This document shows, in pieces, positions 9,089 through 40,624 of a DNA stretch of 64,000 bases; position 1 is the stretch's first letter; each line of letters starts with the position of its first letter. Both the position numbers and the translations under genes were made by a program. The stretch spans positions 17,670,001 to 17,734,000 of the forward strand of contig NC_092353.1 in NCBI RefSeq assembly GCF_963676685.1. The letters are read 5' to 3'. Below the pieces are notes generated by a model that saw only the letters and a program-made list of their open reading frames with translations, had not been told where the DNA came from and ran no database searches. The stretch is from Mytilus edulis. Its lineage: Eukaryota.

Positions 9089-10417
9089 ATGAATTGGGAT
9101 GAATCAGAACAGCTTGGTGACCCGGAAGACGCAATTACCACTGCAGATAATGTATCTAGAACGATAAAAGTACAGGATGTGATTACCATGGAAATGCCAA
9201 TCAAACAACAAGTAACCGTTCAGTTACCGCATGCAGCAACAATTGAACTGGGTCCATCTGTGGGTCTGACGAAGACTGTCACTATAGAGCCCAGTCCGGC
9301 TTTGGGACTGACGAAATCCTATTCTTCAACTATTGAGACAGGTCCAACTCTAGGAATGTCGTTACCCCAGTCCGCTTCTGTTGATAATGCTCCGATTGCA
9401 AACTTAACGTTACCTTCATCGGATAGTCAGAGCAATCCACCTGAGTCACCGAAAGATGTTGTGTTTAAACGAGTGAAGAATCCGAAATTTGTAGAAGGCG
9501 TCAAGGTAATAGGAACAATTGTATACCCTGGTTTTAACGTGTTGCATGTCGGTGTCTCTCCAATAAACGGAACAAAAGCTTGGATATATGGCTGTAAAAA
9601 GTTTAATTTAGTAGACATAGAAAAGGGTGAAATAATAAATAGTTATACTCCTTCTGTAATATTTTCTGATCTATTTTCTGTCGATGAAAATAATGTTATT
9701 GTTGAGGAGCTGATGGGAAAAAGTTTAATGAAAATACATATCAAAGAAGACGGAAGCATGGATGTGGAACCTTTAATTAAAACCTCAGTTTCAAAACGAG
9801 GCAATGCAGATAGCAATACGGAAGAAATACTTAAACATTCTATCTCTAAATCGGGATATTCTTTAACCTGTATCATGCAAAAGCGAACTTGTTGTTGTTT
9901 TTGTTGTTTTTGTTGTTTTCCCAAACGAGTTTTGATGATAAAGCGTCATGATGCAAACGGGCAATTAATAATGCAAAGAAAGCTACAAAAAGACGGTAAA
10001 AACATATTTGAATATTCGGTTGACTCCATGAAGATAAATGGGAACGGGGATGTCTGCGTAGCTGGATCAAACAGCAGTGAAGATTCAACAAAGGGATATA
10101 ATTTTCTAGCAGTTTTTACTGAACAAATAAAGTTCCGATTTTTTTATCCGAAAGGATTGCGTACTAGCGCTAAAACTGGATTGTATGATATTGCAACAGA
10201 TCCTAATTGCAACATTCTTCTTGGATACTGCAGTGAAATTGACATAATAGATTGTAACGGTGTTTTTCTTTGTTCTCTGAAAGCAAGTTTTGGAATTGAT
10301 GGAGAATCGCGGCTACTTTCAGTAGACCACGAAGGCAAGGCATGGATATGCACTGAGACTGGCCGGGTAGTTGTTATAGAATATGCTACATGGGAAATTA
10401 CTGAAATGAAAAAATAA
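9089..10417 (+). CDS. Propeller family gene A (442 aa): repetitive Ser/Thr/Pro N-terminus, NHL-like beta-propeller and Cys string CCCFCCFCCF
   Basis: Long intact ORF; acceptor ttaacag ends at 9081, 7 nt before the ATG; candidate upstream non-coding exon donor ag|gtaagt at 6223. Blade motifs INGNGDVCVAG, IATDPNCNILL, IDIIDCNGVFL, LSVDHEGKAWI are shared with the paralogues. Confidence 0.9.
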   Translation: MNWDESEQLGDPEDAITTADNVSRTIKVQDVITMEMPIKQQVTVQLPHAATIELGPSVGLTKTVTIEPSPALGLTKSYSSTIETGPTLGMSLPQSASVDNAPIANLTLPSSDSQSNPPESPKDVVFKRVKNPKFVEGVKVIGTIVYPGFNVLHVGVSPINGTKAWIYGCKKFNLVDIEKGEIINSYTPSVIFSDLFSVDENNVIVEELMGKSLMKIHIKEDGSMDVEPLIKTSVSKRGNADSNTEEILKHSISKSGYSLTCIMQKRTCCCFCCFCCFPKRVLMIKRHDANGQLIMQRKLQKDGKNIFEYSVDSMKINGNGDVCVAGSNSSEDSTKGYNFLAVFTEQIKFRFFYPKGLRTSAKTGLYDIATDPNCNILLGYCSEIDIIDCNGVFLCSLKASFGIDGESRLLSVDHEGKAWICTETGRVVVIEYATWEITEMKK

Positions 10418-12011
10418 GCGATTTAACGTTATTTTAACAATTTCTTCGTTAAAGTATAATTACCTTGTTACTGGATTTTTTTGTTTGTTTGTCTTAGCAA
10501 TAATATAATGATTCGCGAATGTATATGAAGTGTCCTTATATACCCGTCGTCAATTCACCGATCAAGACAACAGAAGAGAGTTTATCCTATATTTATTAAA
10601 ATAGTTTAACCATGCATATGTTATTGTGTTTTTCACAATATGGATATTCTTTATTTTTTGTACTGTAACAAGTAAATCACAAAAATACTGAACTCTGATG
10701 AAAGTTCAAAAAGGAAATTCCCTAATAAAATGGCAAAATCAAAAGCTCAAATACATCAAATACATCAAACGAATGGATAACAGCTGTCAAGTTCCTGACT
10801 TGGTACAGGTATTTTCTTATGTTAAAGCGCACATGTTTTTGTTTTTCTTTTCAACGAGTTGTAGTAATAAAACACGATGATGCCAATCTTTCAATAACAC
10901 ACTTAGAATATTTTCTATTTAGCTGAAAGAAAAAAAAACATGTAGTATTCTTTTTTCAACTTGTAGTTATATTTTTTTTCACTTATCTGATTTTTATGCA
11001 CATATTCATATCGATGTATTATTTATTACTAATTCATCATATAAATTTTTGTTTGTTGTGGTGCAAAGTGGCACGATTAAGTTTGTATTAAATTTGTTTA
11101 ATAATTTGAACAACATGTAAATCTGGAATCAATACAGGCTCTTCAAAATTACAATGTTATTTTTTTTAAACAATAAAAACAAGCTACATTTACTTACAGA
11201 TTATGACACATTGTCGGAAATATGTCCTTCCTATTAATTTGTCGTTTGAAAAACTTGTAAATTGCAAAAACAAATCTGCCTCATTTTCATTTTTTACATT
11301 TTGATAAATGTATTTGTATAGATGAACAGGGCCTACGTTGAACAGGTAAATAGATACCGAAATATTGTGATAATTTACATGTAACACAATGGCTATGTAT
11401 CTTCACATATAAACATGACGTATATTTGTGCTTTATATTGTTTCACTTCTTCGTTTAATTTTTGGTTATTGACATAGAGGAAACGCTTTAATTGATAGAA
11501 TTTTAGATTGTTGGAAAAATTTAACATCCTTATTAAAGTTAAGAGTAAATCAGACCAACAAAAACAAAAACAAAAGATCAACACGGCAACAATGTTTGGC
11601 ACATATTATAGTTCGCTCGGATGCATGTTTTTAAATAACCATAATATATATATTGGAGCCATGAAATGAAAGACAAAATTTCAGAGCAACAAATTCAAAA
11701 ACTTAAAACAAAAGAAGCCAAAAAAACAAAGACATTAAGCTGTATTCCCAACAGTTGACACGTAACTGTTAAATTAATCACTCGACATGACAACAAATTA
11801 ATTCCACTGATATTAAAAAAAGATCTGAGCCATCGCCAAAATCTAGAGTACAAATACATTTCTAGTACACTCATTTGTAAACTACAAAACAATACAAAAG
11901 AGTCATTTAAACTATGATATTAGAATCGAAGTTTAGACATCTTGCAGATGGTACTTTCGAATACTGGAGCCAATCCGTCAACAAAAGCACAAATCCTTTA
12001 GTAGTATATAC

Positions 12012-12900
12012 ATAAAATTGAGAAAGGAAATGGTGAATATGTCAAAGCGACAACCACCCGACCATAGAGCAAACAACAGCCGAAGACAACCAATGGGTCT
12101 TCAATGTAGCGAGAATTCCCGCACCCGTAGGTGTCCTTCAGCTGGCCCCTAAAATATGCATAATAGTACAGTGATAATGGACGTCATACTAAACTCCGAA
12201 TTATACACAAGAAACTAAAATTTAAAATCATACAAGACTAACAAAGGCCAGAGGCTCCTGACTTGGGACAGGCGCAAAATTGCGGCGGGGTTAAACATGT
12301 TTATGAGATCTCAACCCTCCCCCTATACCTCTAGCCAATGTAGAAAAGTAAAAGAATAACAATACGCACATTAAAATTCAGTTCAAGAGAAGTCCGAGTC
12401 CGATGTCAAAAGATGTAACAAAAGAAAATAAATAAAATGACAATAATACATAAATAACAACAGACTACTAGCAGTTAACTGACATGCCAGCTCCAGACCT
12501 CAATTAAACTGACTGAAAGATTATGTCTTCATCATATGAATATCAGGTACAATCCCTCCCGTTAGGGGTTTAGTATCATACTATCATAAAATATATGAGA
12601 AGAACATAACCCGTGTCATGCCATCAACTGTATTTTTAGAAATAAATGTGTTTAGTTCCGATGCAAAGACCCTATCAGTGAATCAATGTTAAAGCCAAAA
12701 TATGCAATCTTTAATGACCTGACAACAGTATCGTAACTATATCCCCTTTTAATAAGTCTATTTAAAGGTTTTGTTAGTTTCTGAGGAGAATACTGACATT
12801 TTTGTGCTTTATAAAGAATATTTCCATAAAATTTTGGATGTGAAATACCTGAACGTATAAGATGTCTGCATGTTGAGTTATATTTACGAATTATTTCCTT
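12012..12900. mobile_element. Interspersed non-coding repeat (well-preserved copy, probably Penelope-related)
   Basis: Homologous to 3010-3700 (inverted) and to about 58475-58600; shares the cctgacttgggacagg...gcggggttaaacatg block with other repeats in the window. Confidence 0.7.
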
Positions 12901-13216
12901 ATATACATGTATATTTATTATACTATGTCACTGCACTCAACACTCAATTTTGGGAGTTTTGGGATCATATCTTCAGTGATATTGTCATTAATTAAACAAT
13001 GGGGAGGCCAAATAATTTAAAACAAATTGAATTGTACTAACATATTCCATATCATTACCTTGTAGGCTCATGACTTTTAATTCAAATGGCTTGGTTCAGA
13101 TCACTTCTCACAAAAGGTTACAGTGATATTATTCCAAACAGGCAAATTTGAAGAATAAACAGTCAAGTGACGGAAAGTGCTAATATATCACGAAAAAAAC
13201 AACACATTAACCCAAC

Positions 13217-14302
13217 ATGGATAAGCCATTCGTCACCTCATCTCCGTCAATAGATGATCAACACAAAACATCTCTTGAATTCTCTTCCAGATCAGGAGTT
13301 ATTCTTAAAACTGATGACACTGGGTCTGTTCGGATAAGACAAGAGTCCTCTCTGGATAATGATGTAGAAATCAAAACAACTATTTCATGCAAATTAGATT
13401 TTCACGATATTTCTGGAATTTCAATTGTAAGTCCAACAAAAGCATGGATTCATAATCCTCAAAGATTGAGACTAATTGACATTGAGACTGGTCGAATCAT
13501 TCGATCTTTTAAAACAGACATTATACTTCGCTATGTAAATGCCTTGAGTGATACTGCCATACTGTTTTTGTCGAGCAATGAAATTTTGAGGTTAAACATA
13601 AATGATGACCAAACATGTAATTTTCGAACGCTATTGGATGTTTCCGAAGGTGATAATGAAAGAACTCAGAAAAAACTAAATGTTTTCACGGTCTCACCAT
13701 CAGGCGAATTATATGTTTGCCTTACTAACCAGTGGGCATGCGCATGTTTTTCCGGAGAATTTTCTAGCATTGAACGATTTAGCATGGACGCAAAGCTTCT
13801 CCAAAAAGGTAAAATTAGAAATAAAAGAAACAATGTAATATGTAATGCGTATGCTATAGTAGTGAACAGTCACGGCTATATTTGTATTGCCGGAGAAAAA
13901 TTTGAAAGAGATGGTGAAGTTTGCGTGGTAATTCTTGATTCGCAATTTCGTTTCCACTCTTTTTACGATATCAATACTTTTATTCAAGAACATATTCCGT
14001 CAACACTTGCCACAGATATGAATGATAATTTCCTAGTTGTACACACATTTAAGGACAGGGTTAGACCATGGGATGACCCCCACTGGAGAGCTAAGAAAAG
14101 ACAAGATATAACTTTTGTGTCCGTAATTGATGAAAATGGTCAATTCTTATTTCACCCACCGATAGAAGAGGTTCCAATGAACGGTATCGTAAAGATTTGT
14201 ACGTTAGACACAAGTGGTAAAACATGGATGATAAGTGACACAGGTGAAATCATTATTTCTGTGTTTGAGCGCTTGGCAAAAAGAGTTGAAGAAGAAGAAT
14301 AA
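13217..14302 (+). CDS. Propeller family gene B (361 aa), short N-terminus
   Basis: Intact ORF colinear with gene C (VSPTKAWI, VFTVSPSGELYVC, WACACFS, VNSHGYICIAGEK, VIDENG); acceptor ccttgtag ends at 13065. Confidence 0.88.
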   Translation: MDKPFVTSSPSIDDQHKTSLEFSSRSGVILKTDDTGSVRIRQESSLDNDVEIKTTISCKLDFHDISGISIVSPTKAWIHNPQRLRLIDIETGRIIRSFKTDIILRYVNALSDTAILFLSSNEILRLNINDDQTCNFRTLLDVSEGDNERTQKKLNVFTVSPSGELYVCLTNQWACACFSGEFSSIERFSMDAKLLQKGKIRNKRNNVICNAYAIVVNSHGYICIAGEKFERDGEVCVVILDSQFRFHSFYDINTFIQEHIPSTLATDMNDNFLVVHTFKDRVRPWDDPHWRAKKRQDITFVSVIDENGQFLFHPPIEEVPMNGIVKICTLDTSGKTWMISDTGEIIISVFERLAKRVEEEE

Positions 14303-14859
14303 CAAAAGTTTGCCGTCTTATGGAGGACATGGATTATAAGTTTATATCATTGAAGAATATATGTTTTCTAGTTTGAGTTTTGTTAATGTTTTCCTAAATG
14401 TCCTATCTGCTTTTTCATAAACTATGTACTTACCTGGCACAATTTTATCCTTTGCATTCTATAACCATGTCCTTTTTTTGAAGTACGGAACCTCGTAAAT
14501 ACTAATTCAAGAATAGTTCATTAAAATACAATATACTTAAAAGAATGGTTGTATTCAATTTTAACCATTTTAATTTATCCTCACGTAACTTATGTTATAG
14601 AAGATTGTTCATATGACGAGGTTGTCGTCTAGACAATAAGAAATACATATTTGTAAACAATTATAAAAAAGCTCCAATGTTAACAGTTTGAAAAAAACCA
14701 GTTAAGGATAGACCACCTTTCAAATACATGTAACTGATAACAAGAATGTTAGTAATGTAGAATTACAAATTTAACAATATAGGTCTCATATATGGACTTC
14801 AACCTAGAAAACCGGCGTTGTACAATCCAGTCAAGACAACTCACAATACATTGCCACCA

Positions 14860-15320
14860 TAAAAGAGGGACGAAATATACCAGAGGGACAGTCAAACTCA
14901 TAAATCGAAAATAAACTGACAGCGCCATGGCTAAAAATGAAAAAGACAAACAGACAAACAATAGTACACATGACACAACATAGACAACTAAAGAATAAGC
15001 AACATGAACCCCACCAAAAACTAGGGGTGATCTCAGGTACTACGGAAGGGTAAGTAGATCCTGCTGAACATGTGGCATTCATGAAAGGGAAGGGGATTGT
15101 AGCTACGACGTAAGAAACATCCTATATCATCTGTGAAACGGTTATCCCATAACGGTCAACCAACTCGTGATGGCGTCCGTAAAATTTACTCTTGGTTTAA
15201 TAGCTTCCTTGTGAGCAGCAGCCCTATATCAAGAAAATCATGAAAGCACGGGAATATCGCATCAATTAGGAGATAGATACCCCGTATGCAGGTGCTGCTG
15301 GAATGTTGCTTCTTAGAAAC
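14860..15320 (-). mobile_element. Penelope-like element 3' portion
   Basis: Minus strand encodes SNIPAAPAYGYLS.LMR-like RT remnant (about 15255-15310), followed by the same 3' sequence seen at 41100-41250 and 43560-43790. Confidence 0.7.
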
Positions 15321-15429
15321 GATGGCTCAAATTCTCTAAGGCGAAGTTGACCTTATTTAAATGTGGAATTTTTAGAATCCTGTTTGATTATATAGATTCA
15401 TACATTTCTACGTTTTCAATCACGGGTTT

Positions 15430-16400
15430 CAAATGTGACGTATTTTTGTGCTTTTTTTTACAATTTCAAATGTGATGTCACTTTTTGCGATGAGGCTTTG
15501 ACTAACTCGGGTGTGTATTTTTTTGTGTTGGAATATATTGGTGTATGTAATGTATCCGGGTTTTTTTCTTTTATTTAATTAGTTAATACTTCAGTTTTAT
15601 CATGTATATCTATTATATACTAGTAGTAATTTTATAAAATTTACTGTTTACAAAAGTATAAATTATTCTAAATAATAAGGATGTTCTTATCCCAAGCAGA
15701 AACCCCTAGCCGTATTGGGCACATTATTTTTGACCTTTCAGTCCTCAGTGCTGTTCAACTTTGTACATGTTTTGGCTTTCGAACTTTTTTATCTGGGCGT
15801 CACTCGTTAGTCTTGTGTGGACGAAACGCACTTCTGGCGTATTAAATTTTAAACCTGATGCCTTTTGTTAGCTGTTATTTGTGTGTTTCTTTGTCCAATA
15901 TGTTCTCCTATTTATTTGTATTGTAGTCCAGTAATGTTATGTCGTCATTTTAATGTTATGTTTAACTTTGCTATAAAAGCGGGATGTTTTGTGGCAAAAC
16001 CAGGTTCTCTTTAAAAAAAAAATGTCCTGTTCCAAGTCAGGAATATGGCCATTGTTATACTATAGTTCGTTTCTGTGTGTGTTACATTTTAACGCTGTTT
16101 ATGTTGTGTCGGTTGTTTCCTCTTATATTTGAGTGAGAATTCAGATTACTATAAGTCGTGTCACGATACTTTTCTATCCCAAATTTATGTATTTAGTTTT
16201 GATGTTATATTTGTTATTCTCATCGGTTTATGTCTAATGCATAGTTCGTTTTTTTGTGTTACATTTTAATGTTGTGTCGTTGTTCTCCTCTTATATTTAA
16301 TGCGTTTCCCTCAGTTTTAGCTTGTAACCCGGATTTTTTTTCTTCATTTTTCTATCGATTTATGAGTTTCGAACAGCGGTATACTACTGCTGCCTGTATT
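15430..16400. mobile_element. Interspersed repeat with decayed hammerhead (about 15796-15840); inverted copies at 17805-18350 and 23348-24300
   Basis: Terminus gaacagcggtatactactgctgcc is the reverse complement of ggcaacagtagtataccgct at 23357, 17808 and 56399. Confidence 0.75.
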
Positions 16401-18959: not shown

Positions 18960-21342
18960 AGAACTGTTATATGTTATATGTAACGGCTGCTTTGAACTGG
19001 GTAAAGTACCTGAGCAATGGACCCAAGGGATAGTTAATTAAATACTCAAACCAGGAACACAAGACAACCGACTACCATCAAATTACCGGGGAATAACGCT
19101 TGTGTCCGTACCCAGTAAGATATATTGCAGTGTACTAAACAACCGCCTGAACGCTTTTTTTGAAGAAAACAATATTCTTTGTGAGGAGCAGAATGGATTC
19201 CGCAGCAAACGTAGTTGTGAAGAGCATATTTGGAGTTTATTTAGCGTTATTTCAAATAGGAAAATTTCAAAACATTCAACTTTTGTTAGTTTTATTGATA
19301 TGCGGAAAGCTTTTGACTCTGTACCAAGAAATTTGTTGTGGTTTAAACTTCGAAAAGTTGGAATAAGTGGCAAATTTCTGTCTGCTCTACAGTCCTTATA
19401 TGAGAATGTTAGATGTACAGTTCGTGTCAATGACAGACATACACCATGGTTTAATGTGAACTGCGGAGTTAAGCAAGGCTGTTTATTGTCTCCCACGTTA
19501 TTTGCCGCCTACATCAACGACCTTGCTGAACGTATCAATAATCTAAATTGTGGTGTTCACATCGATGATACTATGCTGAGTATACTTTTATATGCAGATG
19601 ACATTGCACTGATTGCTCCGGACGAGGAAAGTCTTCAGAAGATGTTAGATACTGTTTCGGAGTGGTGCCGTGAATGGAAAATTGATATAAATCCAATCAA
19701 AAGCAACGTTATCCATTTCAGGAATAAACCTGTCAGTCGATCGGACTCCCCATTCAAATGTTCCGACTTGGATATTGAGTACACTTCTTCATACAAATAC
19801 TTGGGCATATGGTTCGACGAGCATTTGACTATGGACAAAGCAGTTAAGGAACTTTCGAAGTCAGCTAGCAGGGCACTAGGCGCGCTATATGGAAAGTTCA
19901 TTAGTGCTGGTGGAATGACTCACAGTGTGTACACAAAATTATATTCCACTATGGTAGAACCTGTTTTATTCTACGGAGCAGGCATTTGGGGAACTAAAAC
20001 ATTTTCAGTGATTAATTCGATTCAAAATAAAGCATCAAAGTTATTCTTGTCAGCTGGTAAATATACATCAAATACCGCCGTCAGAGGTGACATTGGATGG
20101 TCCTCGTGTTTTACCAAACAGCGTATTGCTTGTATTCGTCTGATGTGTCGAATTACTAGATCTGATGATGTCCGTATTACCCGTAAGATATCAGCATGGA
20201 TTGCAAATAGGCGTAAGGGATGGTACTACCAAGTTAGCAAAATGATACAAAAGTGTAATGCTACGGACATAGTGAACGATAATAACATTACGACAAAAAC
20301 TGCGATGAGAACAATTTATGAGCGCGTAATTATTGTAGACAACGACGAATTTGTTAGCGAACTTTTTAATGACAAGAATAATCCAAACGGCAATAAACTA
20401 CGTACATATAGACAATACAAAGAAAAAGTAGAAACAGAAAAATATTTGAAACTTCAGTTGCCGAGATCGGTCCAACGAGTTGTTGCCCTGTTCCGAAGTG
20501 GATCGCTTCCGTTGGCAATCGAGACAGGCCGATACGCACGACCGCAAATACCAGTTAATGAAAGAAGTTGTAAATTCTGTCCGGATGACGTCTTAGAAAA
20601 CGAGAAACATTTTTTAATGAACTGCACTATGTATGATGACTTAAGATATAATTTATTTCTCGAGCCAAAAACTTTATAGAAAACTTTGATACTCTTGATA
20701 TTGACAGTCAATTTATCAGTCTTATGAAATGTAAAGAAATACAATCCTCATTATCATACGCACTTTTCAATTTTTATCAGAGAAGAAAGAAATTTATTTG
20801 AATGTTAACATATGTTTTTCATAGTTATATTTTTAAAGTCTTTTTACTATCGTTGTTATTATTGTTACTTTTAAGTACGGATATTTTTAGCTAGATCATT
20901 TATTTTATATCATCACATTTAAATTATTTTTGTCTCCCTAAAAATATTTTTTTTTTTGTTCTTTTTCTTTTTGTTAGTTTTTATTCAAGAAGTGTATCCG
21001 GTTTTTGGCAAAACCTTTTAAACATTGCTTATGTTTTTAATCTGTAATTTCTTTATTAATATAGTCTATCTAATATTAATTGATACTTTTACTAGTAAAT
21101 ATTTTAAAAGCAGTTTACTTAATGTGATAAACCAGTAATTATTTTTGAATTGTATAAAGAAATGCTCATTTTATTTTTTTATATAAATGTACAGTTGTCT
21201 GATGTGTTTTAAAGTGTCTCATAAGTCTATTCTAAGGCTGGATATTTGATTTCTGTTTGTATTATGAATTGTTGTATATATATATTGTCTGATCAAATAT
21301 GTGACACTATAATAAAATAATTATTTATTTTATTTATTTATT
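18960..21342 (+). mobile_element. 5'-truncated non-LTR retrotransposon (RTE-X-like; clade uncertain)
   Basis: RT coding sequence begins mid-domain (CFELGKVPEQWTQGIVN*ILKPG...NYRGITL); the 3' UTR ends in a gtgtctcata...tatgtgacac inverted repeat, AATAAA and a (TTAT)n tail. Confidence 0.9.
19102..20801 (+). pseudogene. LINE ORF2 reverse transcriptase with C-terminal CCHC zinc knuckle (disrupted)
   Basis: Motifs QNGFR, FIDMRKAFDSV, GVKQGCLLSPTLF, LLYADD, YKYLG and ERSCKFC...ENEKHFLMNC. In-frame TAA upstream of 19102; apparent 1-nt frameshift near 20663, after which AKNFIENFD...RRKKFI* continues to 20801. Confidence 0.9.
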
Positions 21343-25278: not shown

Positions 25279-26520
25279 ATGTCATCTAAAGAGAATCTTT
25301 GCGAGGCAGATTTCACTGCAAAACAATCAAAAGATCTTAATGAACAAGACAAGACAACAAAAATTGAAGACAAAGAAGATTTAAAGGATGAAGTATTTAC
25401 CGAAGACATGCAAAATGATGAAATAATCACGGTATCTACAGAAACCTCTTCTATTCTTCAAACTCCAACTGCTGAAGCGGACGCATTACAATTAACCTCC
25501 AGTTTAGGACTGTCCTTGAAATCGGATGATACGGACTTTATAGAAATGAGAAAGGATCTGAAAACCGATAATGATTCCGAAATCGAATGTGTTGCGTCCT
25601 TCAGATTAGACTTTAGTGACGTTTCAAGAATTTCCTGCGTTAGTCCGACAAAAGCTTGGATTAGTAGTAGCAGTAAAATAAGGCTGGTCGATATTGAAAA
25701 TGGTCAAGTACTAAGGTCATATAAATCAGACGTTCCTGTCTGTTTCCTGAATGCTTTGAATGAAACTAGTTTTCTTTTTTCATCAGGCAATGAAATTTCT
25801 AAACTAAGCATTGCTAACGACAATACAAGCAAACTAGAAACATTCCTTGACTTTTCCGCTGGTGGCAAGAAATCAGTACAGCGCAGATTAGATGTATTTA
25901 CACTTTCACCATCCGGGGATTTGATCGTTTGCATTACCCAGAAATGGACATGTGCCTGCTTTTCTTCAATAGCTTCCCTTATTGAAAGATATGACAATGA
26001 GGCAAAACTAGTTCAATCAGGCAAAATTCAAAATAAGGGAAAGAAATTAATTTGTGATGCCTACTCTTTAATAGTAAATAGCAATGGTAACATTTGTATT
26101 GCAGGAGAGAAAGCCCAGCAAAAAGGGGAATACTGGGTTGTTGTTCTTGATTCAAATTTCCACTTTCGGTATTTTTACGACAGAAATACAACTTCTCAGA
26201 TACATAATCCATCATCGCTAGCTACAGATTTGAAAAATAATGTTCTGATTGTGAACACCTTTAGAGATAGGACAAAGAGAAAGGTAACAGTTGAAATGGC
26301 TAAAAAGAAGAAAGAACTGACATATGTCGCGATCATTGATGAGAATGGTATATTCCGACTTCATTTACCAACTGATGCATTTCATTCGGATGGACCAGTA
26401 AGATTCATCACAATTGATAATAAGAGTAAGGCTTGGATGATAACGGATGCAGGACAAATAATTGTTGCCACTTTTAAGGATTTATCGAAAAGGGTTGAAC
26501 CAAGTCACGATGAAAAATGA
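25279..26520 (+). CDS. Propeller family gene C (413 aa), acidic N-terminus
   Basis: Acceptor tattacag ends at 25265 with the ATG 13 nt later (MSSKENL...). The computed ORF extension from 25045 is probably intronic. Contains WTCACFS and the blade motifs. Confidence 0.9.
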   Translation: MSSKENLCEADFTAKQSKDLNEQDKTTKIEDKEDLKDEVFTEDMQNDEIITVSTETSSILQTPTAEADALQLTSSLGLSLKSDDTDFIEMRKDLKTDNDSEIECVASFRLDFSDVSRISCVSPTKAWISSSSKIRLVDIENGQVLRSYKSDVPVCFLNALNETSFLFSSGNEISKLSIANDNTSKLETFLDFSAGGKKSVQRRLDVFTLSPSGDLIVCITQKWTCACFSSIASLIERYDNEAKLVQSGKIQNKGKKLICDAYSLIVNSNGNICIAGEKAQQKGEYWVVVLDSNFHFRYFYDRNTTSQIHNPSSLATDLKNNVLIVNTFRDRTKRKVTVEMAKKKKELTYVAIIDENGIFRLHLPTDAFHSDGPVRFITIDNKSKAWMITDAGQIIVATFKDLSKRVEPSHDEK

Positions 26521-28789: not shown

Positions 28790-29580
28790 ATTTAGATATT
28801 CTCCCAAATAAGACATGACATCTTTTGTCTTCTCGTATAAAGATATTATTGTTAATAACCTAATCGAAATGGATCGAAAAAATCAATTCAAAACAATGGT
28901 TGATGTAAAATAAAATCATATAAAAAAGAACAAACCAAAATTAATAGGGGATATTGTAAAGATGGTGAAATATGCTGGGCACTGAATTTTTTTTCACAAT
29001 TCAGAATGTAGAATTTCATGTTTGTCTCACAAAATGGACTTTTTTGGAAATCGCAAAATGCAAATTTTCATAAAGCATAATGGTGACAAAATGATTGTCG
29101 ACAAGAAAGTCGTGTTTACAGTAAATACAGAGACTTTACCAATAACCCATATTGTATGGTAGTTTGTAGCAATGGTGACATGTGTATTGCAGGACAAAGT
29201 TTTGACTGGTGTCTACCTAATAATCGTGTTGGAAGCAGAATTTAATTTCCGGTTTTCATACGATAGAATATCATCGACGCATATTTTTCGTCCATTATCA
29301 AGTGCAGATTTCTTGAAAGACAATATTATCATGGTAACGAAACAGACAAACACAATAGATAAAAATACTTATTTTTTATAAATAATTTCAAAACCGAAGA
29401 TTAAATCTTTATCGTTACAATAGACGAAAATGGTTGTGAAATCGGTTGTCAACGTTTCAAGTTACCCTCCGATGTGGCCACTATTTTTAAATATGTCCGT
29501 TATATAACTTTTGACAGTGATTTAATGGTGTTGATTACAACAAATTTTGGACGAATAATTTTAGTTCTTTTCAAAGTAAA
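28790..29580 (+). pseudogene. Pseudogene of the propeller family (closest to B/C)
   Basis: Frameshifted fragments SQKWT, SNGDMCIAGQ, IIVLEAEFNFRFSYDRISSTHIFRP, TIDENG and VRYITFDSDLMVLITTNFGRIILVLFK align with gene C (QKWT, SNGNICIAGE, VVVLDSNFHFRYFYDR, IIDENG, VRFITIDNKSKAWMITDAGQIIVATFK). Confidence 0.82.
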
Positions 29581-30039: not shown

Positions 30040-30280
30040 TGTTCATCAGCACTTTTAGTGATGAAAAGCCTTTTTATGGCGGTCTTTTTTTTTATTGCTG
30101 GAGGGACCCTGAGTGTCTGGAAGAACCACCGATCTTCGGTAGGAATACTGATAGTCCTAGTCAATTCAGATTGGAGTCGAGTAACCTGCCACTTGTGGAA
30201 TTCGATCTCACAACCGTCGTTTTGATAGGCTTGTTATACAGCTGTTTGTCTACCTAAGACTACTAGCCACCGATGCCCCC
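30040..30280 (-). mobile_element. Degenerate tRNA-derived SINE
   Basis: Minus strand starts ggggcatcggtggctagtag (A-box-like), has gagatcgaattcc (B-box-like) and a ggtggttcttccagacactcagggtccctccagcaataaaaa core resembling the conserved central domain of molluscan SINEs. Confidence 0.55.
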
Positions 30281-33369: not shown

Positions 33370-34707
33370 ATGATAATAATAGTACGTTACCGTACGCCTG
33401 AGCTTGATATTGATGACCGACCAGGGTCCTGTTTTGAGTCATTTTCGTCGTCAGACTATCTTGATGGAAGTCCTGGAGGAACAGAAAAGACACTCATTAG
33501 TCATGAACTCGACTTCGACGATCTAGATTCAGATCACCGAAGTACGGCATATTCACGTCAAATAGTTGGGATGTCATCGGATTGTCTTGATGGATCAAAA
33601 GGTACTGACGAAAACAACCTTTCCAGTACACACAAGCTTGTCACTGGAACATTGCAGTATTTTGGAGAGTCGTCTTGTAGTATCGACAATGCAACGGATA
33701 GTTTGGATGGAAATCCACATATTATGAAACCGTCGATTATCAACGTGGCATCAAACATCAAAACATCGGATGATGCAGGAACAGAAATATCAGAAAACGG
33801 CGTTAGTGTTAAAGTTGTCAGTCTTCCATATTTGAAAACAGATGATAGAATACAGTGTGTTTTGGAATTTGATTCTAGCTTTAGAAATATATTGGATATA
33901 TACCCTATAACCCCTACTGTAGCTTGGGTTTACAATTTAGAAAGACTTAGACTGATTGATATAGGCGGAAAACTGTTGTTTGATTATCCTTTGAAAGGTG
34001 GATTCTTATATCTTCAGGGTACAGAGAACATCAATGAAGTTCTCCTTCTTGACCATGGAGAAAACAAGATTATAAAAGTTGTGTTGAGTAAAGATACAAG
34101 TAACCAAACAGATGCGTTGATTGGGCCGTTGATAGACATGGGTACAAATGAAAAAACACAAAACAAAATAAAACATTTTCTTTTACGCAAGTCAGGGGAC
34201 ATAGTTGTATGTGTGAGCCGTAAACTTAGAAAATGTGGATGCATTCCGACAAATATATTATATATACAGATTTACAGTAGAGACGGACTTTTTCTTCGTG
34301 AAACAAAACTTCAACATAATGGAACAAATCTTACAGGCGATATTTACGCTATCACTGAAAATAATAATGGGCATATATGTTTAGCTGGCAATAAAGATAC
34401 AGATAATAATTCACATTATCTAGTCGACCTTGACATTCAGTTGAGGGAACACTTTTTCTTTGATGGAAATGAATCAGACACCAATTTTTTCCCAACGTCT
34501 TTAGCAACCACTCGCCGAAACGATATACTATTTGTGAATAATCTAGAACAAATACAAGTCATCGATGAAAATGGGAAGATTTTAAGAAATATACTAACAG
34601 ACAGCTTCATCTCCCATGGTAGACCAGAACGTATTGCTACGGACAGAGAAGAAAAGCTATGGATTGTCACGAGTTTAGGCAAAATCCTCAGTGTTCAATT
34701 AAAATAA
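33370..34707 (+). CDS. Propeller family gene D (about 445 aa; start uncertain)
   Basis: Intact ORF with RKLRKCGCIP loop, ITENNNGHICLAG, FFPTSLATT, VIDENGKILR and IATDREEKLWI. Acceptor cttgcag ends at 33296; candidate donor aa|gtaagt at 32883. The first ATG (33310) is in frame but stopped at 33364. Confidence 0.85.
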   Translation: MIIIVRYRTPELDIDDRPGSCFESFSSSDYLDGSPGGTEKTLISHELDFDDLDSDHRSTAYSRQIVGMSSDCLDGSKGTDENNLSSTHKLVTGTLQYFGESSCSIDNATDSLDGNPHIMKPSIINVASNIKTSDDAGTEISENGVSVKVVSLPYLKTDDRIQCVLEFDSSFRNILDIYPITPTVAWVYNLERLRLIDIGGKLLFDYPLKGGFLYLQGTENINEVLLLDHGENKIIKVVLSKDTSNQTDALIGPLIDMGTNEKTQNKIKHFLLRKSGDIVVCVSRKLRKCGCIPTNILYIQIYSRDGLFLRETKLQHNGTNLTGDIYAITENNNGHICLAGNKDTDNNSHYLVDLDIQLREHFFFDGNESDTNFFPTSLATTRRNDILFVNNLEQIQVIDENGKILRNILTDSFISHGRPERIATDREEKLWIVTSLGKILSVQLK

Positions 34708-37039
34708 ACCAGTTTTGTAAATACTGTATCGTGATTATGAATTACCTATGACTATTAATCATCATGGATTTATAGCTCCTTTTCAAATGTTTCTAGTCCA
34801 CCTACAAAGGGGAAAACCCTAATTCAAAAATATCTTTGAGATTGTATAAAAAATATATTGTGCGTGCTATTGAATCGATATAAAGATTTCTTCGTCAGTG
34901 TTTATAAAAATAACTTATAGAAAAAAGTACGTTTATACCATGTATACTGATTGGTGTAGGTAAGAAATTGTGTCTCAATGACAAAATTGTATTTCATTTT
35001 TTTTTTTTTTTTGTAAATTAAGGATGCTGTCTAATTTATGCTGACCCCATGTAGCCTGTGGTCATACTTTGTTAGCTAAGCTGTAAATAATCCCTTTCGA
35101 TGATAATATTTAAGACATTAAAAAAAAACATGACAACAGGTACAAATTAAGGTTATACTTCCTGTATCTTGTCGAATATAAAGTTTATCATTTGACAAGT
35201 AATTATAGCGTAGCATATCACAATGTAAGTAGTATACTTGATTATTTCAGTATTTTTGGTAGATTTAGGTTTCGCTCGCGTGCTTTTTTCAAACTTACTT
35301 GGTCAGTTTAATCGGATAATACATGTAAATGTATGCGTTTGATATCAAACCATAAACTGCGCATTTTGTGATAAATACCTTTGATAAATGTTACTGTGAT
35401 GGTTTATTGGTCATGTTTTTATCTTTCACGAAGTTTTACCTTAATTGAGGGATGTGTCGTCCATTCATATTCGTTTTTCTTGAATGGTACTATTTTGCAT
35501 GCATTTTTTTAGTCAATTCTATATGGATACATTTACAATTTAGAATTATGTCCCTCTATTACGGAAGTACAACTAAGATGGTATTTTATAAATCAAAAAA
35601 GGTCTTGCGTGTTTTGTTTGATTTAAAAAAAATATTTATTTCATTCTATCTATTTTGATATTCTGTTTGTATGACCCTTTTTATATTTTTTATTATTTGA
35701 TCGTGTTGCACCTAGCTCTCCGTGATACAACTATAAACAATAATTTCAAGTTTATTATATACCATTTGTACGTATTTAAAATGCATTTGAGGTAGAAGAA
35801 AAACATGGGATGTTTTGAAATTGATAAACAATTCTCATGGGACCAATTACAGTTTGACGTCATATTTATGAATAAACCGCTTTGAATGAAAATGTTGGGG
35901 TTGACCTGGTTTTAACGCACCGGACCTGTCATAACCTGTAGATGATGGTTGCACTTTTATATTTGAGTAAATGTCGTGCAGTCTTGATAAGCACAGCTAA
36001 TCGAATCGATTGTGTATTGTATATTCCGATTCATAAAACCCTTATCAGCAAGGTATGTGTAAGGGTCCACTTAAAAGAATGCGATCTTTCATCTGAAGAA
36101 AAATTTGAAAGTCATTCATTTTATGATAATCTAATGAAACAGTGCACCAATAATAAAGTGAATTCAATATGTAGCTAAATTATTACACGGATAAAATATC
36201 AAAACCACCTTCAATTAACAAGATTACCTCAAAGCAGTACTACACAACAAAATGTGCGACCACCACCCAACTCAAAGAACATATGTCACTATACTCAAAA
36301 TGTACCTCAAAACGAGTATAGCAAAACAGAAATCATAATCTGGTCGATCATCGTGGAGTATATGTATTTAATCTAATCATGTATAAAGTAAAATCACAAA
36401 AATACTCCAAGGAAAAATTCAAAAAGAAAAGTCCCTCATCAAACTGCAAACTCAATAGCTTAAAAACATCAAACAAATGAACTACAAATATAATATTCTT
36501 GACTTGGTACATGTATTTTTTTTAAGAAAACCGTAGATTGAACCTGGTTTTATTGCTAGATTAACCTTTAACTTATATGACAGTTGCATCAAATTCCATT
36601 ATATTGACAACGATGTGTGAACAAAACAGACATTATCGGTAAAAATGTCAATAATGAGGATTCAGCAGTCATTATCTTATAATCTTTATCACTATAAAAA
36701 CAAACAAATATGTATCAAAGAAGCACAAAAAGGCATATAAACAAAGGACATTAGCAAGAATGAAAGACAAAAATACAAAAATTTACGATAGCGCAATAAC
36801 ATAATGACGAGATGTATAAGTACAGAGCAACGTCATATATTTTAAAGAAACGTAAAAAAAAACATATAAACAAAGCACATTAGCAAACCTAAAACACAAT
36901 AATACACAAAGTCACGCCAAATGCATATCATCAAAATAGACTAAGCAATAAAAGTAATATCCATAATATAAATAAAAGAATACTATAACGCGTAATTAAT
37001 AGCAAAAACAAGTCGATACCCAGATCCTATACTTCAAGA

Positions 37040-38330
37040 CCATTCGTGTATCATTTGTGAAGTTGATACGGAATATTTACCAACAAGGTCTTTCGATTAA
37101 CTTTTTTTGAAAAAAGAACGAGACGTTTTTTGACTTACCCCTGGTTCATCATTTTTCTGCGCAGATACTGGTGACTGTTAACAAAGTCTGAGTAGGAGCT
37201 ACAACCTCTTGAATATTGAATAAGTTTGAAAATGTATACCCAATATGCAGGTGAAGTTAGTATATTACTACTAAAGTGGGGTAAATTGATAATTTCAAAA
37301 TTAAAACTCGTTTGTCATAGATTCTGGTACTGAGATGACCGTGTATGTCAAATTCGCGGCATAAGTCTAATAATGAGACGGAGGAAGCCGTGTATGTTGT
37401 TTCTTTAAAGTCTAGCTTTGGTAGATATTAATTGAACCCAATTATAAAAGTTTGGATTGTTTATGGAAAGAACATCATCAATATATCTGAATTTGAAATT
37501 AAATGTGCTGGCATCTTTGATCGTCATGTTTTTGACACATGTCTGAAGGAACTACGATTCATATGAAAATAAGAAGAAGTAGGCAAGGAGAGGTACACAG
37601 TTCATTCCCATAGTAATGCCGACAATTTGCTGAAAAAGTCTACCTCCAAATTTAACAACTATGTCGTCAAAAACCAAGCATACTGATCACTTGTTCCTCT
37701 GTGTAGCATGTTTGCAATTTTGTTCACTATTACCAAAATATGCCGTATGGTATCCCAAAGTAATAAATGTATAGCGTGTGCTATCATTTTTATGTTGACA
37801 AGCATTGTGAATTATTTCTTTTAGACCGTTTTTCAATTTCACTTGTTTCGTTTGCTTTGGCCGCAAATCCTTTTCTCTCTTATAACATCAGAGAATGTCC
37901 TGCTTTGTTTTTGCAGAACGATAGATGGAACGTCGAGACATATTTTTTAACAGCTTATGTTATGGTTACTTCGGATCACCTCCCAGATAGTCTAATATTC
38001 TTGTGCAGATGGTACAGGAAATTCTTGTAATTAAAGAAGTTAAATGATTGATTTAACGTACTCCGGGTAATAATTCGTGGACAACCGTTTGGCATTTTGT
38101 AATTTTCGTTAAGTTGTTTGCAGTTTTTGTATCTTTTTATTTTGCAGCTTGTTTTACTAATGATTTATTGATAGTTATATAATTGGCATTACTTTCCATA
38201 TAATTGTCTTGCTTATGTTAAATGAAGTGTTGAACAACCAGAAGAATTTTTCTTTTCTGAATAGAATTTATCTGATGATACTAGTGAACAACTTTGGGTT
38301 AAGGTTCAGATTATAGGGTCACCTGATTTA
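37040..38330 (-). mobile_element. Penelope-like element RT relic
   Basis: Minus strand gives FNFKFRYIDDVL (about 37470-37505) and VEFGGRLFQQIVGITMGMNCVPLLAYFFLFSYES (about 37555-37655); many stops. Confidence 0.8.
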
Positions 38331-38880
38331 TACATAGGTAGTTTTTATAAACCTCCAAATAAAACTGAGGAGGACTGTTTAACACACTTAGGAGAAGGCA
38401 AGGCAAAAATTTGGTTAGGTGGTGATTTTAATCTGGGTGGAATCGATTGGAATAATTATTCCATAAAACAAATGGCATACAACTCAAAACAATGTCAGCA
38501 ATTAATAGACATATGCCAAGACAACCAGCTAGAACAAGTTGTAACAACACCAACACACTTTACAGAAACATCACAGGCCGTCTTGGTCTCTTTTTTTACT
38601 AATAACAGTTGTACTCTGGAATTCACTTCCACAAAACATCATTAGTGTTAACTCTTTGGATCAGTTTGAAATACTGATCCACAGTCAACATATTTCGTTA
38701 TCCACTCTGTTTGTACATATAGGTAAATGAGTTATTTTTATTTTTATTTTTGCACAAATTTAATTTTGGATTAATGCACTCATTATATTGTTACTTTTTA
38801 TTAAGTGTCTGCTTGCGATGCGCCGACGTATAGTCATCAATGTGCTGATTTATCGTCGTACGATGTAGATGTAGATGTAT
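38330..38880 (+). mobile_element. Internally deleted CR1/L2-group LINE: AP-endonuclease fragment fused to ORF2 C-terminus and 3' tail
   Basis: IGSFYKPPN, KIWLGGDFNLGGIDW, LEQVVTTPT and ...FFTNN are followed directly by LWNSLPQNIISVNSLDQF and a (GATGTA)3 tail. Confidence 0.75.
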
Positions 38881-39448
38881 CTTCCAGGTTTATTATATTC
38901 CATATATTTAAATCTATATGATGCAGTGACTCTCCACTATGTAGGCGCGTTTGATGTGTTTGAGCTTTTGATATCATCTTTTGATTAGGGACTGTCCTTT
39001 TTGCATTTTCCTTGGAGTTCAGTATTTTTGTGATTTTACTTTTGACTGGTCGGTGTACATTATGACATTGTATAAAGGAGAAACTAAGGAAAGTTAAATC
39101 CATAAATAAGAGATATTTGGGCTTACTGGAGTACAAACTTCCCGTTTTGTAGCTACTCTTAATGAGGAAAACCCGTTTGATTAAACGGTTATAGGGGTGT
39201 AACAATACATAACCGCGTACGGTATGATGTGAGAATTCACTCATGTTTATCTGATGTCGTCTTGGATAAGAATAACGTAGTTGTTGCAGTGACACAGGAC
39301 AAGAAACAAACGATCAAAATACAAGAATTACCAAACACACACACCGATGTATTGTTTTTTTTAGTTTAAATAATGATAATTGTTTCGAAATGTCAAACAT
39401 ATGTATACTTATCTAATTAAGCATTCCTTGATTTTTAACTTTACTAGC

Positions 39449-40624
39449 ATGGCTTCATACGAAGAACACATACCAGAACAACAACTCATTTCATTTAATG
39501 ATGATGATATTCAAAGCAATAGCGTTGTGAAAACTTCTGACACCAAATCGACAGGTTTTAGTTCAGATGAGAACAAAACTCCTGTCAAAGACCTGACTAA
39601 TCCAACGGAAGAAGAAATCTTTAGCACTAAATTGTCAGATATTTCCACCCCAAAGAAGTCTAGCCAGCTTCCGTGCAATGCAGATGGTACTAGAGAGAAC
39701 ACAACAAAAACGGGTGTAACTGTAGAGGAAAAACATTCAACTTCGTTTAAGGTTTTTCAGTATGTTGGTCCGGATCCTATTGATTGGGTAATAAAATTTG
39801 ATCCAAGTTTTGCAATTACAGAAATTATTCTTATTAATTCAACTAAAGCCTTGTTTTTCAACACGTTAAAACTGATGCTCATTGACATAGAACAACGAAC
39901 TGTGCTTGGTGAATACAACATGGAAGAATATTGTTTCACTGATGTACAATATGTTGATGATGACCGTGTTTTATTCAGAGACTTGATGGAAAACAAAGTA
40001 GTTCAATTCGATTTAGAAACAAAAACATCACATAATTTGATAGATGTAAATTATGATTCCAATGATACTTTTCGACATAAGATTAATGGGTACATGGTTA
40101 GGAAATCAGGAGACATTATTTTATTTGTCACAAAGAAAGAAAACCGCGCACTTTTGTCACGATATGTATCGTATATTCAACTGTACATTATCAACGGTAG
40201 CTTTGTTCGTGAGAAAAAATGTCAACAAGATGACAAAAACGTTATTGGGGATGTTGTGGCAACTGTTGAAAGTATAAACGGGAATGTATGCGTGATAGCA
40301 GAAAAAGGTACTGATGCGAATTCAAAATATGTAGTGGTGCTTGATTCTAATTTTGAATTGAAGTTCTGTTATGAAGGCAACACACTCGATGGTTCGACCT
40401 TTCTCCCTACGTCCATTGCAACAAGTAGCAATAACAATATATTTGTATTACACAGAATAAGTGAAATAGAAGTCATTGATGAAAGAGGAAAATTTATTGG
40501 ATATATTCCTACAAATTCAATCCTTCCAGATGGCCAACCTTGTAGAATTGCTATAAACAGCGATAATAAAGCTTGGGTGGTTACCACGTACGGTAAAATT
40601 GTGTGTTTACAACTTGGATGTTAA
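39449..40624 (+). CDS. Propeller family gene E (391 aa), lacks the Cys loop
   Basis: Acceptor tttactag ends at 39447, ATG at 39449 (MASYEEH...). VRKSGDIIL, ESINGNVCVI, FLPTSIATS, VIDERGKF and IAINSDNKAWV align with gene D. Confidence 0.88.
   Translation: MASYEEHIPEQQLISFNDDDIQSNSVVKTSDTKSTGFSSDENKTPVKDLTNPTEEEIFSTKLSDISTPKKSSQLPCNADGTRENTTKTGVTVEEKHSTSFKVFQYVGPDPIDWVIKFDPSFAITEIILINSTKALFFNTLKLMLIDIEQRTVLGEYNMEEYCFTDVQYVDDDRVLFRDLMENKVVQFDLETKTSHNLIDVNYDSNDTFRHKINGYMVRKSGDIILFVTKKENRALLSRYVSYIQLYIINGSFVREKKCQQDDKNVIGDVVATVESINGNVCVIAEKGTDANSKYVVVLDSNFELKFCYEGNTLDGSTFLPTSIATSSNNNIFVLHRISEIEVIDERGKFIGYIPTNSILPDGQPCRIAINSDNKAWVVTTYGKIVCLQLGC

What the first reader, a model, noticed from the sequence alone, without database searches (positions are those of the whole stretch)
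9089..40624. Tandem array of six stand-alone NHL-like beta-propeller genes with a candidate S-acylation loop
Seen: five long ORFs plus one pseudogene, all on the same strand, each with one coding exon whose first ATG lies 1-13 nt after a splice acceptor. Each has a disordered N-terminus and a shared propeller of about 300 aa. At the same position in one blade sits a Cys/basic/hydrophobic loop: A QKRTCCCFCCFCCFPKR, B NQWACACFS, C QKWTCACFS, D RKLRKCGCIP; E has KKENRALLSR with no Cys. Known: bivalves have large expansions of B-box/coiled-coil proteins ending in this propeller (ITENxNGDICV...FxPxxIxT...xIDxxG), and Cys clusters flanked by basic and aromatic residues are the palmitoylation signature of SNAP25, cysteine string protein and CYSTM proteins. 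Inference: this may be an undescribed subfamily that dropped the TRIM ligase module and instead tethers the propeller to the cytosolic face of membranes, acting as a diversified sensor or adaptor set. There is no signal peptide or TM helix.
Basis: partly seen in the sequence, partly recalled or inferred. Interest (0 to 1): 0.8.

Follow-up and report, generated by a model that had tools for sequence, protein, structure and literature searches.

The report
Mussel NHL propeller genes, cysteine-tipped hairpin
A blue-mussel gene cluster encodes five related proteins made of a floppy head and a six-bladed NHL propeller whose protruding hairpin usually ends in cysteines, which may anchor them to membranes, though that is untested.

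Summary
The window is Mytilus edulis. It carries five intact same-strand paralogues (A-E) and one broken C-terminal fragment, and the quoted Cys loops are exact.

All five first-ATG proteins exist letter for letter in NCBI's annotation of this chromosome. No B-box or RING exon lies in the array.

AlphaFold models and profile and fold searches show a six-bladed NHL-type propeller behind a disordered N-terminus.

The Cys motif sits at the tip of the long strand B-C hairpin of blade 3. Counted by loop topology, that face is net basic and the other face is acidic.

The same hairpin exists in the nearest relatives, which are bivalve B-box-NHL proteins, but there it is polar or acidic and almost Cys-free.

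On a tree, the B-box-less clade includes an oyster member. It needs one gain of loop Cys and one loss, in the E lineage.

Gene A's cysteine string is a 9-nt repeat, (TGTTGTTTT)x3, whose copy number varies between sequences.

- Not supported: the "diversified sensor set" reading. The family is small, with conserved 1:1 orthologues.
- Not supported: a splice acceptor 1-13 nt before gene B's ATG.
- Untested: S-acylation remains plausible.

Verdict: a new variant of a known kind, of moderate interest.

The parts
9089..10417 (+). Gene A: single coding exon, 442 aa. Disordered N-terminus (aa 1-137) with three IExGPxxG(L/M) repeats, then the propeller (aa 138-442).
   Evidence: ORF. The exact protein is in NCBI's annotation of an 84.8-Mb contig. 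AF2 model of aa 138-442: pLDDT 88.5, pTM 0.87.
9890..9919 (+). Cysteine string of A (CCCFCCFCCF), encoded by TGT followed by (TGTTGTTTT)x3. It forms the loop between strands B and C of blade 3.
   Evidence: Codons. Loop residues 130-141 of the model, pLDDT about 65. Two of 13 close A sequences lack one CCF unit.
13217..14302 (+). Gene B: 361 aa. An in-frame TAA lies two codons upstream of the ATG. Loop CAC at 13739-13747.
25279..26520 (+). Gene C: 413 aa. Tip CACF (aa 225-228; Cys codons within 25951-25959). Polybasic loop RTKRKVTVEMAKKKKE (aa 331-346).
   Evidence: Full-length AF2 model: pLDDT 80.2, residues 1-68 below 50, hairpin strands 215-224 and 229-238. Loop table.
29102..29575 (+). Pseudogene fragment covering roughly blades 4-6, with stops and a frame change. 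It is closest to C.
   Evidence: tblastn (C: E 6e-08 and 2e-07; stops shown in the alignment).
33370..34707 (+). Gene D: 445 aa. Loop RKLRKCGCIP (Cys codons within 34234-34242).
34940..34959 (+). 3' end of a 5' exon of gene E, ATGTATACTGATTGGTGTAG followed by a gtaag donor. It adds MYTDWC(S) in annotated isoform X1. It lies 233 nt after D's stop codon.
   Evidence: P0071 sequence. Unique pattern match, 1 match against 0.01 expected. Sequence.
39449..40624 (+). Gene E: 391 aa. Acceptor AG at 39446-39447, exon from 39448. Loop KKENRALLSR has no Cys. The protein ends ...CLQLGC.

Best explanation
Shown. This is a tandem array in Mytilus edulis of five intact genes and one dead fragment. Each gene has its whole coding sequence, or all but a few codons, in one exon. 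Each protein is a disordered N-terminal region followed by a six-bladed NHL-type beta-propeller. The family branched from bivalve B-box-NHL (TRIM-like) proteins and has no B-box, RING or coiled coil. In blade 3 the strand B-C hairpin is unusually long. Its tip changed from acidic/polar in the B-box relatives to basic plus hydrophobic plus Cys: CxC[F/I] in B, C and D, and a 7-Cys string in A. The Cys were lost in E.

Inferred. Counted by loop topology, the face that carries this tip is net basic, and in the B/C branch it also carries a polybasic loop. The opposite face is acidic. The most likely mechanism is peripheral docking of that face onto an anionic membrane leaflet. Docking would rest on electrostatics plus insertion of the hydrophobic tip, and would be stabilised by S-acylation of the tip cysteines, most strongly in A. 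The disordered N-terminus would be left free to recruit partners. E would be a weaker-binding or non-acylated member.
For: Fold and kinship:
- The family profile matches the TRIM3/TRIM2 NHL domains in the PDB at E 1.9e-07 to 6.5e-07.
- The AF2 models are confident.
- Foldseek's best hits are the NHL domains of Thin, TRIM71, Brat and TRIM2, with target-normalised TM up to 0.73.
- VIA-align gives Z 22.7 for Brat NHL.

Stand-alone status:
- The exact first-ATG proteins are in NCBI's annotation.
- E's upstream exon adds only 7 residues.
- A 400-aa contig ORF, P0228, starts MSVQN and then MASYEE, changing exactly at the acceptor.
- B has an in-frame stop two codons before its ATG.
- No B-box-like exon lies in 8001-42000; the best E was 0.33.

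Tip position: CACF is the 4-residue turn between two 10-residue strands, with pLDDT about 90. A's string is a 12-residue loop.

Derived chemistry: 18 ingroup against 45 outgroup hairpins of 12 residues or more gave mean Cys 1.89 against 0.33, net charge +1.67 against +0.11, and hydropathy 0.04 against -0.66.

Conservation:
- CxC is kept in all 8 B/C-branch sequences, down to 46% identity.
- A's Cys cluster is kept in P0083 at about 45-49% identity.
- The tree needs one gain and one loss.

Face polarity: loops on the B-C/D-A face are +7 (C) and +4 (A). Loops on the other face are -8 and -8.

Precedent: the beta-propeller proteins RPE65 and Neu3 are S-acylated, and for RPE65 this is needed for membrane binding (abstracts of PMC6435699 and PMC5482835).
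Against:
- B, C and D have only two tip cysteines, and some clade members have one or none.
- I recall, without checking here, that a basic top face is how the Brat and LIN-41 NHL domains bind RNA. If so, face polarity fits a nucleic-acid reading equally well.
- The polybasic loop of the B/C branch could be a nuclear localisation signal.
- Exposure of the Cys side chains could not be computed, because only secondary structure and pLDDT are returned.
- Assigning loops to faces rests on standard propeller topology, not on coordinates.
- The Mann-Whitney values ignore phylogenetic relatedness.
- The clade that unites the B-box-less proteins has only 83/82 support.
- A's long string is a slippage-prone repeat and could be partly neutral.
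Confidence: 0.4

Rival explanations
1. This is a ligand-binding NHL face, as in the TRIM-NHL proteins. The basic top face, with the hairpin and the polybasic loop, would bind RNA or a protein partner. The cysteines would be part of that surface rather than lipid acceptors, and the polybasic loop might also act as a nuclear localisation signal.
For: The closest solved folds are the RNA-binding NHL domains of Brat, Mei-P26, TRIM71 and LIN-41. The B-C/D-A loops are net basic. The hairpin already exists in the B-box relatives, so it is an old functional element.
Against: The tip became hydrophobic and Cys-rich (W, F, L, I, C). That is unusual for an RNA-contacting loop. E keeps the basic residues but lost the Cys, so the two features are separable. 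No RNA-binding test was possible.
Confidence: 0.25
2. This is a metal or redox site. CxC tips, and the Cys string of A, would bind Zn, Cu or Cd, or would form reversible disulfides. They might bridge two propellers in the way a zinc hook or clasp does.
For: CxC and Cys runs are classic thiolate ligands (recalled from metallothioneins and the Rad50 zinc hook, not tested here). The motif sits at an exposed apex, where an intermolecular site could form.
Against: One hairpin supplies only two ligands, so a partner chain would be needed. The flanking aromatic and basic residues and the Phe-interrupted string in A look more like acylated cysteine strings (recalled). No His or Asp co-ligands are conserved nearby.
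Confidence: 0.15
3. The cysteines are incidental. They would be drift in a surface loop, and A's string would be a neutral microsatellite expansion without a specific role.
For: A's string is a perfect 9-nt repeat whose copy number varies: 2 of 13 close A sequences have one unit fewer. The E lineage lives without the Cys.
Against: Loop Cys are present in 13 of 16 clade members on the tree, with a single inferred gain. They are kept from mussels to an oyster relative. They are invariant among 46-91% identical C-type sequences. Six of six outgroup rows on the tree have none.
Confidence: 0.12
4. These are terminal exons of ordinary TRIM-like genes, whose B-box/RING exons lie upstream and are spliced in frame.
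For: AG dinucleotides lie just before the ATGs of A, C, D and E, and the reading frames stay open across them. One old ab initio model, P0008, adds 45 residues to C.
Against: The exact first-ATG proteins are annotated for all five genes. No cluster member carries an extension longer than 45 aa, apart from one D-E chimera. E's exon 1 adds 7 residues. No B-box-like coding sequence lies in 8001-42000. B has a stop two codons upstream of its ATG.
Confidence: 0.03

Closest known systems
TRIM-NHL proteins (TRIM2, TRIM3, TRIM71/LIN-41, Brat, Mei-P26, Thin/TRIM32) and the bivalve B-box-NHL expansion
   Same: Both have a six-bladed NHL propeller. The profile matches TRIM2/3 NHL at E about 2e-07 and the fold matches at Z 21-23. 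Bivalve B-box-NHL proteins are the nearest sequence relatives outside the family, and they share the long blade-3 hairpin.
   Different: This family has no RING, B-box or coiled coil, and has a disordered N-terminus instead. The hairpin tip is basic, hydrophobic and Cys-bearing rather than acidic or polar. The Pfam NHL model does not reach any threshold on A-E.
Stand-alone NHL-repeat proteins (mollusc 'hypothetical' NHL clusters; vertebrate NHLRC4-like)
   Same: Both have the architecture of an NHL propeller without a ligase module. These are the nearest Atlas clusters by language-model features, at 0.90-0.92.
   Different: No alignment or E-value lies behind that call. The Cys-tipped hairpin and the long disordered heads were not examined in those clusters.
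Cysteine-string and Cys-cluster S-acylated peripheral proteins (CSP, SNAP25, GAP43) - recalled, not searched
   Same: Both have a run of cysteines mixed with Phe and flanked by Lys/Arg in a protein without a signal peptide or TM helix. Gene A has KRTCCCFCCFCCFPKR.
   Different: Here the motif is the tip of a beta-hairpin inside a folded propeller, not a flexible linker or terminus. B, C and D have only two Cys. Acylation is unproven.
S-acylated or membrane-inserting beta-propellers: RPE65, sialidase Neu3, PROPPINs (the last recalled)
   Same: These are propellers that reach membranes through loop cysteines or hydrophobic loops. RPE65 C112 palmitoylation is needed for membrane binding, and Neu3 is S-acylated (abstracts only).
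   Different: They belong to unrelated propeller families (7-bladed carotenoid oxygenase, sialidase, WD40), are enzymes or lipid binders, and share no sequence relationship with this family.

Membership tests
NHL-repeat six-bladed beta-propeller | Six blades of four antiparallel strands, closed by an N-terminal strand | tested here: met
   The AF2 models of A (pLDDT 88.5) and C (80.2) show 24 strands in six groups, plus an N-terminal closing strand.
NHL-repeat six-bladed beta-propeller | Sequence-profile similarity to solved NHL domains | tested here: met
   The profile of the five domains matched TRIM3 (7qrw) at E 1.9e-07 and three TRIM2 chains at 5.8e-07 to 6.5e-07. The next hits were at E >= 0.13.
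NHL-repeat six-bladed beta-propeller | Match to Pfam PF01436 (NHL repeat) at its gathering score | tested here: not met
   A-E gave no NHL match even at E <= 1. Relatives one tier out do match. The repeat model is short, and this branch is divergent.
NHL-repeat six-bladed beta-propeller | Solved NHL domains are the best structural matches | tested here: met
   Foldseek rank 1 is Thin NHL at E 6.9e-11, and TRIM2 reaches target-normalised TM 0.73. VIA-align gives Brat Z 22.7, while 7-bladed G-beta reaches about 20. The margin is therefore modest.
TRIM / TRIM-NHL E3 ligases | RING finger | tested here: not met
   Pfam found no RING in A-E or in the 9 other ingroup proteins tested. No similar exon lies in 8001-42000.
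TRIM / TRIM-NHL E3 ligases | B-box zinc finger followed by a coiled coil | tested here: not met
   The searches are the same as for the RING finger. C's N-terminus is modelled as disordered, with residues 1-68 below pLDDT 50.
S-acylated peripheral membrane proteins | Accessible cytosolic cysteine(s) next to hydrophobic or basic residues | tested here: inconclusive
   The motif sits at a hairpin tip. No signal peptide or TM helix was found by hydropathy. Solvent exposure could not be computed.
S-acylated peripheral membrane proteins | Thioester-linked fatty acid, and membrane association that depends on it | not testable with these tools
   This needs acyl-RAC or ABE, metabolic labelling and localisation experiments.

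The most novel reading that the evidence does not exclude
This is a lipid-anchored NHL propeller family. Early in pteriomorph bivalves, a TRIM-like B-box-NHL gene lost its ligase module. It turned the tip of an existing blade-3 hairpin into an S-acylated, basic and hydrophobic membrane anchor on a positively charged face. That would create a small, conserved set of membrane-docked scaffolds. Their variable disordered heads would recruit different partners, anchor strength would be tuned by Cys number (7 in A, 2 in B-D, 0 in E), and in A the number would be adjusted by slippage of a 9-nt repeat.
Probability: 0.3. Interest if true: 0.6.

Novelty: new variant of a known kind. Interest (0 to 1): 0.4.

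Why it matters
NHL propellers are known as RNA- or protein-binding modules of TRIM ligases. A branch that gave up the ligase and re-tooled one hairpin into a cysteine and basic tip would be a clean natural example of a soluble binding domain becoming a membrane-docked one. It comes with built-in controls: E has no Cys, A has a length-variable Cys string, and the B-box relatives have a polar hairpin.

It also gives a structural name to six mussel genes that databases currently call 'uncharacterized protein'. If the cysteines are not acylated, the finding shrinks to a routine sub-family description.

Tried and rejected
What led nowhere:
- RNA evidence. The look-up of sequencing runs listed raw RNA-seq runs X21-X23 and possible RNA contig runs.
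The Logan contigs behind the homologues could therefore not be read. That they are transcripts is inferred only from their narrow length ranges and from P0228.
- Pfam on A-E gave nothing useful.
- A word-indexed search with A's propeller found only its own cluster.
- Upstream regions share no promoter or exon-1-like sequence; only interspersed repeats are shared.
- Literature. Four searches on NHL/TRIM and bivalve terms returned no listed paper on this sub-family. One search on accession numbers returned 0 papers. One search on NHL, bivalve and S-acylation returned nothing relevant. Supplements were closed and may hold gene lists that include these loci. PMC8382680 lists a bivalve-expanded B-box orthogroup (passage seen). 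PMC4346834 had no relevant TRIM passage.

Considered and rejected:
- A hidden TM segment in A's Cys string. The Kyte-Doolittle 19-residue maximum is 1.35.
- N-myristoylation. No protein starts with Met-Gly.
- A CaaX box. E ends in ...LQLGC, which is not CaaX.
- A large, fast-diversifying family.

Full report
**What is there**

The window carries five long ORFs on the + strand. Each can be read from its first sensible ATG:
- A: 9089-10417, 442 aa
- B: 13217-14302, 361 aa
- C: 25279-26520, 413 aa
- D: 33370-34707, 445 aa
- E: 39449-40624, 391 aa

They are paralogues. Identity to A is 22-25% and B/C share about 49%. tblastn E-values run from 1e-16 to 1e-110.

A sixth copy at about 29102-29575 is a fragment of the C-terminal half, with stops and a frame change. 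An RVT_1 reverse-transcriptase ORF (19102-20679, E 2.4e-35) lies between B and C. The intergenic DNA is full of interspersed repeats.

**Source and annotation**

Exact-sequence look-ups show that all five first-ATG proteins are already in NCBI's annotation of an 84.8-Mb contig. One member of E's cluster on that same contig is named as a Mytilus edulis protein, XP_071133407.1.

Orthologues are named only 'uncharacterized' or 'hypothetical'. One automatic name is 'Tripartite motif-containing protein 2'. They occur in:
- M. trossulus: LOC134687616, LOC134687618 and LOC134687620
- M. galloprovincialis: VDI29861 to VDI29866, consecutive on one 272-kb contig
- M. coruscus

The genes are therefore known as models but not characterised. 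Seven literature searches found no paper on them. Supplements could not be opened.

**Are they stand-alone?**

- B has an in-frame TAA two codons before its ATG and no AG in between.
- For E, the annotated isoform X1 (P0071) starts MYTDWCS and then MASYEE. I found its upstream exon at 34940-34959. It ends ...TGGTGTAG and is followed by gtaag. It joins the acceptor whose AG ends 1 nt before the ATG. The upstream exon therefore adds seven residues.
- A 400-aa contig ORF from a close relative, P0228, starts MSVQN and then MASYEE, changing at the same point.
- Across the five clusters, the longest N-terminal extension is 45 aa, in an ab initio model (P0008). None has a B-box.
- N-terminal halves of eight B-box-NHL relatives found nothing in 8001-42000; the best E was 0.33.

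**Fold**

Pfam finds nothing in A-E. A profile of the five domains, however, matches the NHL domains of TRIM3 and TRIM2 at E 1.9e-07 to 6.5e-07, with the next hits at E >= 0.13.

AlphaFold2 on A's domain gives pLDDT 88.5 and pTM 0.87, with six four-stranded blades closed by the N-terminal strand. Full-length C gives pLDDT 80.2, with residues 1-68 below 50, which I read as disordered.

Foldseek ranks the NHL domains of Thin, TRIM71, Brat, TRIM2/3 and LIN-41 at the top, with target-normalised TM up to 0.73. VIA-align gives Brat Z 22.7, ahead of 7-bladed G-beta at about 20.

**Family and relatives**

A full scan of 1.84 billion representatives gave 527 hits at E <= 0.001 and 11 at E <= 1e-30.

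The core set has no Pfam family at E <= 0.01 in 14 of 14 proteins tested, apart from one sub-threshold Big_6 match in P0002. The next tier carries B-box, sometimes RING and TRIM coiled coil, plus NHL repeats.

In this genome only the five window genes score E <= 1.6e-117. One 582-aa paralogue lies 6.3 Mb away (5.9e-26) and three weaker matches follow.

A member of the clade is an Ostrea edulis protein, and an outgroup row is from Crassostrea virginica. ESM-Atlas look-alikes are mollusc NHL clusters of 290-363 aa, so NHL proteins without a TRIM module are common there.

**The cysteine hairpin**

In C, the tip CACF (aa 225-228) is the turn between two 10-residue strands, B and C of blade 3, at pLDDT about 90. 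In A, the 12-residue loop TCCCFCCFCCFP lies between 9-residue strands at pLDDT about 65.

Aligned to the family HMM, the long hairpin is also present in many B-box relatives. There it reads like [LM]xD[DE][YW]S......SRR.

| Hairpins of 12 residues or more | 18 ingroup | 45 outgroup |
|---|---|---|
| Mean Cys | 1.89 | 0.33 |
| Mean net charge | +1.67 | +0.11 |
| Mean hydropathy | 0.04 | -0.66 |

The Mann-Whitney p values (1e-05, 0.004 and 0.0005) ignore relatedness and are descriptive only.

I built a tree of 22 rows, leaving out the loop columns and four gappy rows with fewer than 240 filled columns (P0093, P0094, P0097, P0101). It puts the 16 B-box-less rows on one side with 83/82 support. 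With 'Cys' defined as at least one loop Cys, it needs two changes: one gain and one loss. The loss is in the E lineage, with 99/99 support.

Neighbouring genes are nearest kin, (B,C) and (D,E), as expected for tandem duplication.

**Gene A's string**

It is encoded by TGT followed by (TGTTGTTTT)x3. Two of 13 close A sequences, P0043 and P0046, lack one CCF unit. The distant orthologue P0083, at 45-49% identity, has TCCCC. The cluster is therefore old, and its length is set by repeat slippage.

**Face polarity**

I assigned loops to faces by strand order, not by coordinates. The B-C/D-A loops sum to +7 in C and +4 in A. The A-B/C-D loops sum to -8 in both.

In the B/C branch, the 5B-5C loop on the same face is polybasic, RTKRKVTVEMAKKKKE. 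It is also basic in P0001-P0005.

That the B-C/D-A face is the conventional 'top', ligand-binding face of NHL and WD40 propellers is recalled, not tested.

**Mechanism**

A basic face that carries a hydrophobic, Cys-bearing tip fits peripheral docking on an anionic membrane, reinforced by S-acylation. There is no signal peptide or TM helix by hydropathy. S-acylated propellers exist: RPE65 and Neu3 (abstracts only).

A basic top face is also how I recall Brat and LIN-41 binding RNA. CxC motifs can also bind metals. I rate the readings as follows:
- membrane docking with acylation: about 0.4
- ligand or RNA face: 0.25
- metal or redox site: 0.15
- incidental: 0.12
- hidden TRIM exons: 0.03

- The family is small and conserved. 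M. edulis against M. trossulus is 94.1-95.5% identical in the propeller and 85.7-92.4% in the N-terminus. M. edulis against M. galloprovincialis is 98.9-100% identical in the propeller. 'Diversified sensor set' is therefore not supported.
- Presence/absence variation was not testable.
- The splice-acceptor statement fails for B.

**Verdict**

This is a real, well-delimited sub-family: B-box-less NHL propellers with a Cys-tipped blade-3 hairpin, dating at least to the common ancestor of mussels and oysters. The structural and evolutionary description is solid. The lipid-anchor mechanism is an attractive, testable inference. It is a new variant of a known kind, with interest of about 0.4.

Noticed in passing
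Protein P0229 (Logan contig of 1733 nt, cluster of the E-like P0080); corresponds to window D 33370-~33780 plus E from ~39434: A 525-aa ORF joins the disordered N-terminus of a D orthologue (MIIIVRYR...TSDD) to FNFTS-MASYEE and the whole E propeller. FNFTS is the genomic reading just upstream of E's ATG. The M. edulis sequence shows no canonical donor or acceptor at the junction. It could be a fusion allele, a read-through product or an artefact.
   Followed up: partly
window 34703-34959: E's 5' exon ends only about 250 nt after D's stop codon, and an AATAAA overlaps that stop. D's 3' end and E's promoter or first exon are therefore almost contiguous.
   Followed up: partly
window 19102-20679 (+): A 525-aa ORF has a reverse-transcriptase domain (RVT_1, E 2.4e-35). 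It is a retroelement inserted between genes B and C.
   Followed up: no
window 198-446 and 4610-4855 (+): The upstream neighbour looks like a different gene. One ORF has a Cys pattern that reminded me of a SUEL/galactose-binding lectin domain (recalled, not searched). Another ORF holds a hydrophobic stretch followed by KRKQAKKK, like a transmembrane exon.
   Followed up: no
window 9230-9380 (gene A, aa ~50-95): A's disordered head holds three copies of a unit of about 14 residues, IExGPxxG(L/M). It is conserved in Mytilus orthologues and partly conserved in P0083.
   Followed up: no
window 40607-40621 (gene E C-terminus): E and its orthologue P0080 are the members without loop cysteines. Both end in ...CLQLGC, with a Cys as the last residue. 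This is not a CaaX box, and its meaning is unknown.
   Followed up: no
L006 (G000:C10:23947652-23951455), ORF 604-2352: This is a distant sixth intact family member of 582 aa. It has a long Lys/Glu/Ser/Thr-rich head and the hairpin VEKRHSFLCIPGK. It lies 6.3 Mb from the array on the same chromosome.
   Followed up: partly
window 49541-50161 (+): A 206-aa ATG ORF rich in Ser, Lys and Arg lies downstream of the array. It has no similarity to the propeller family and was not searched.
   Followed up: no
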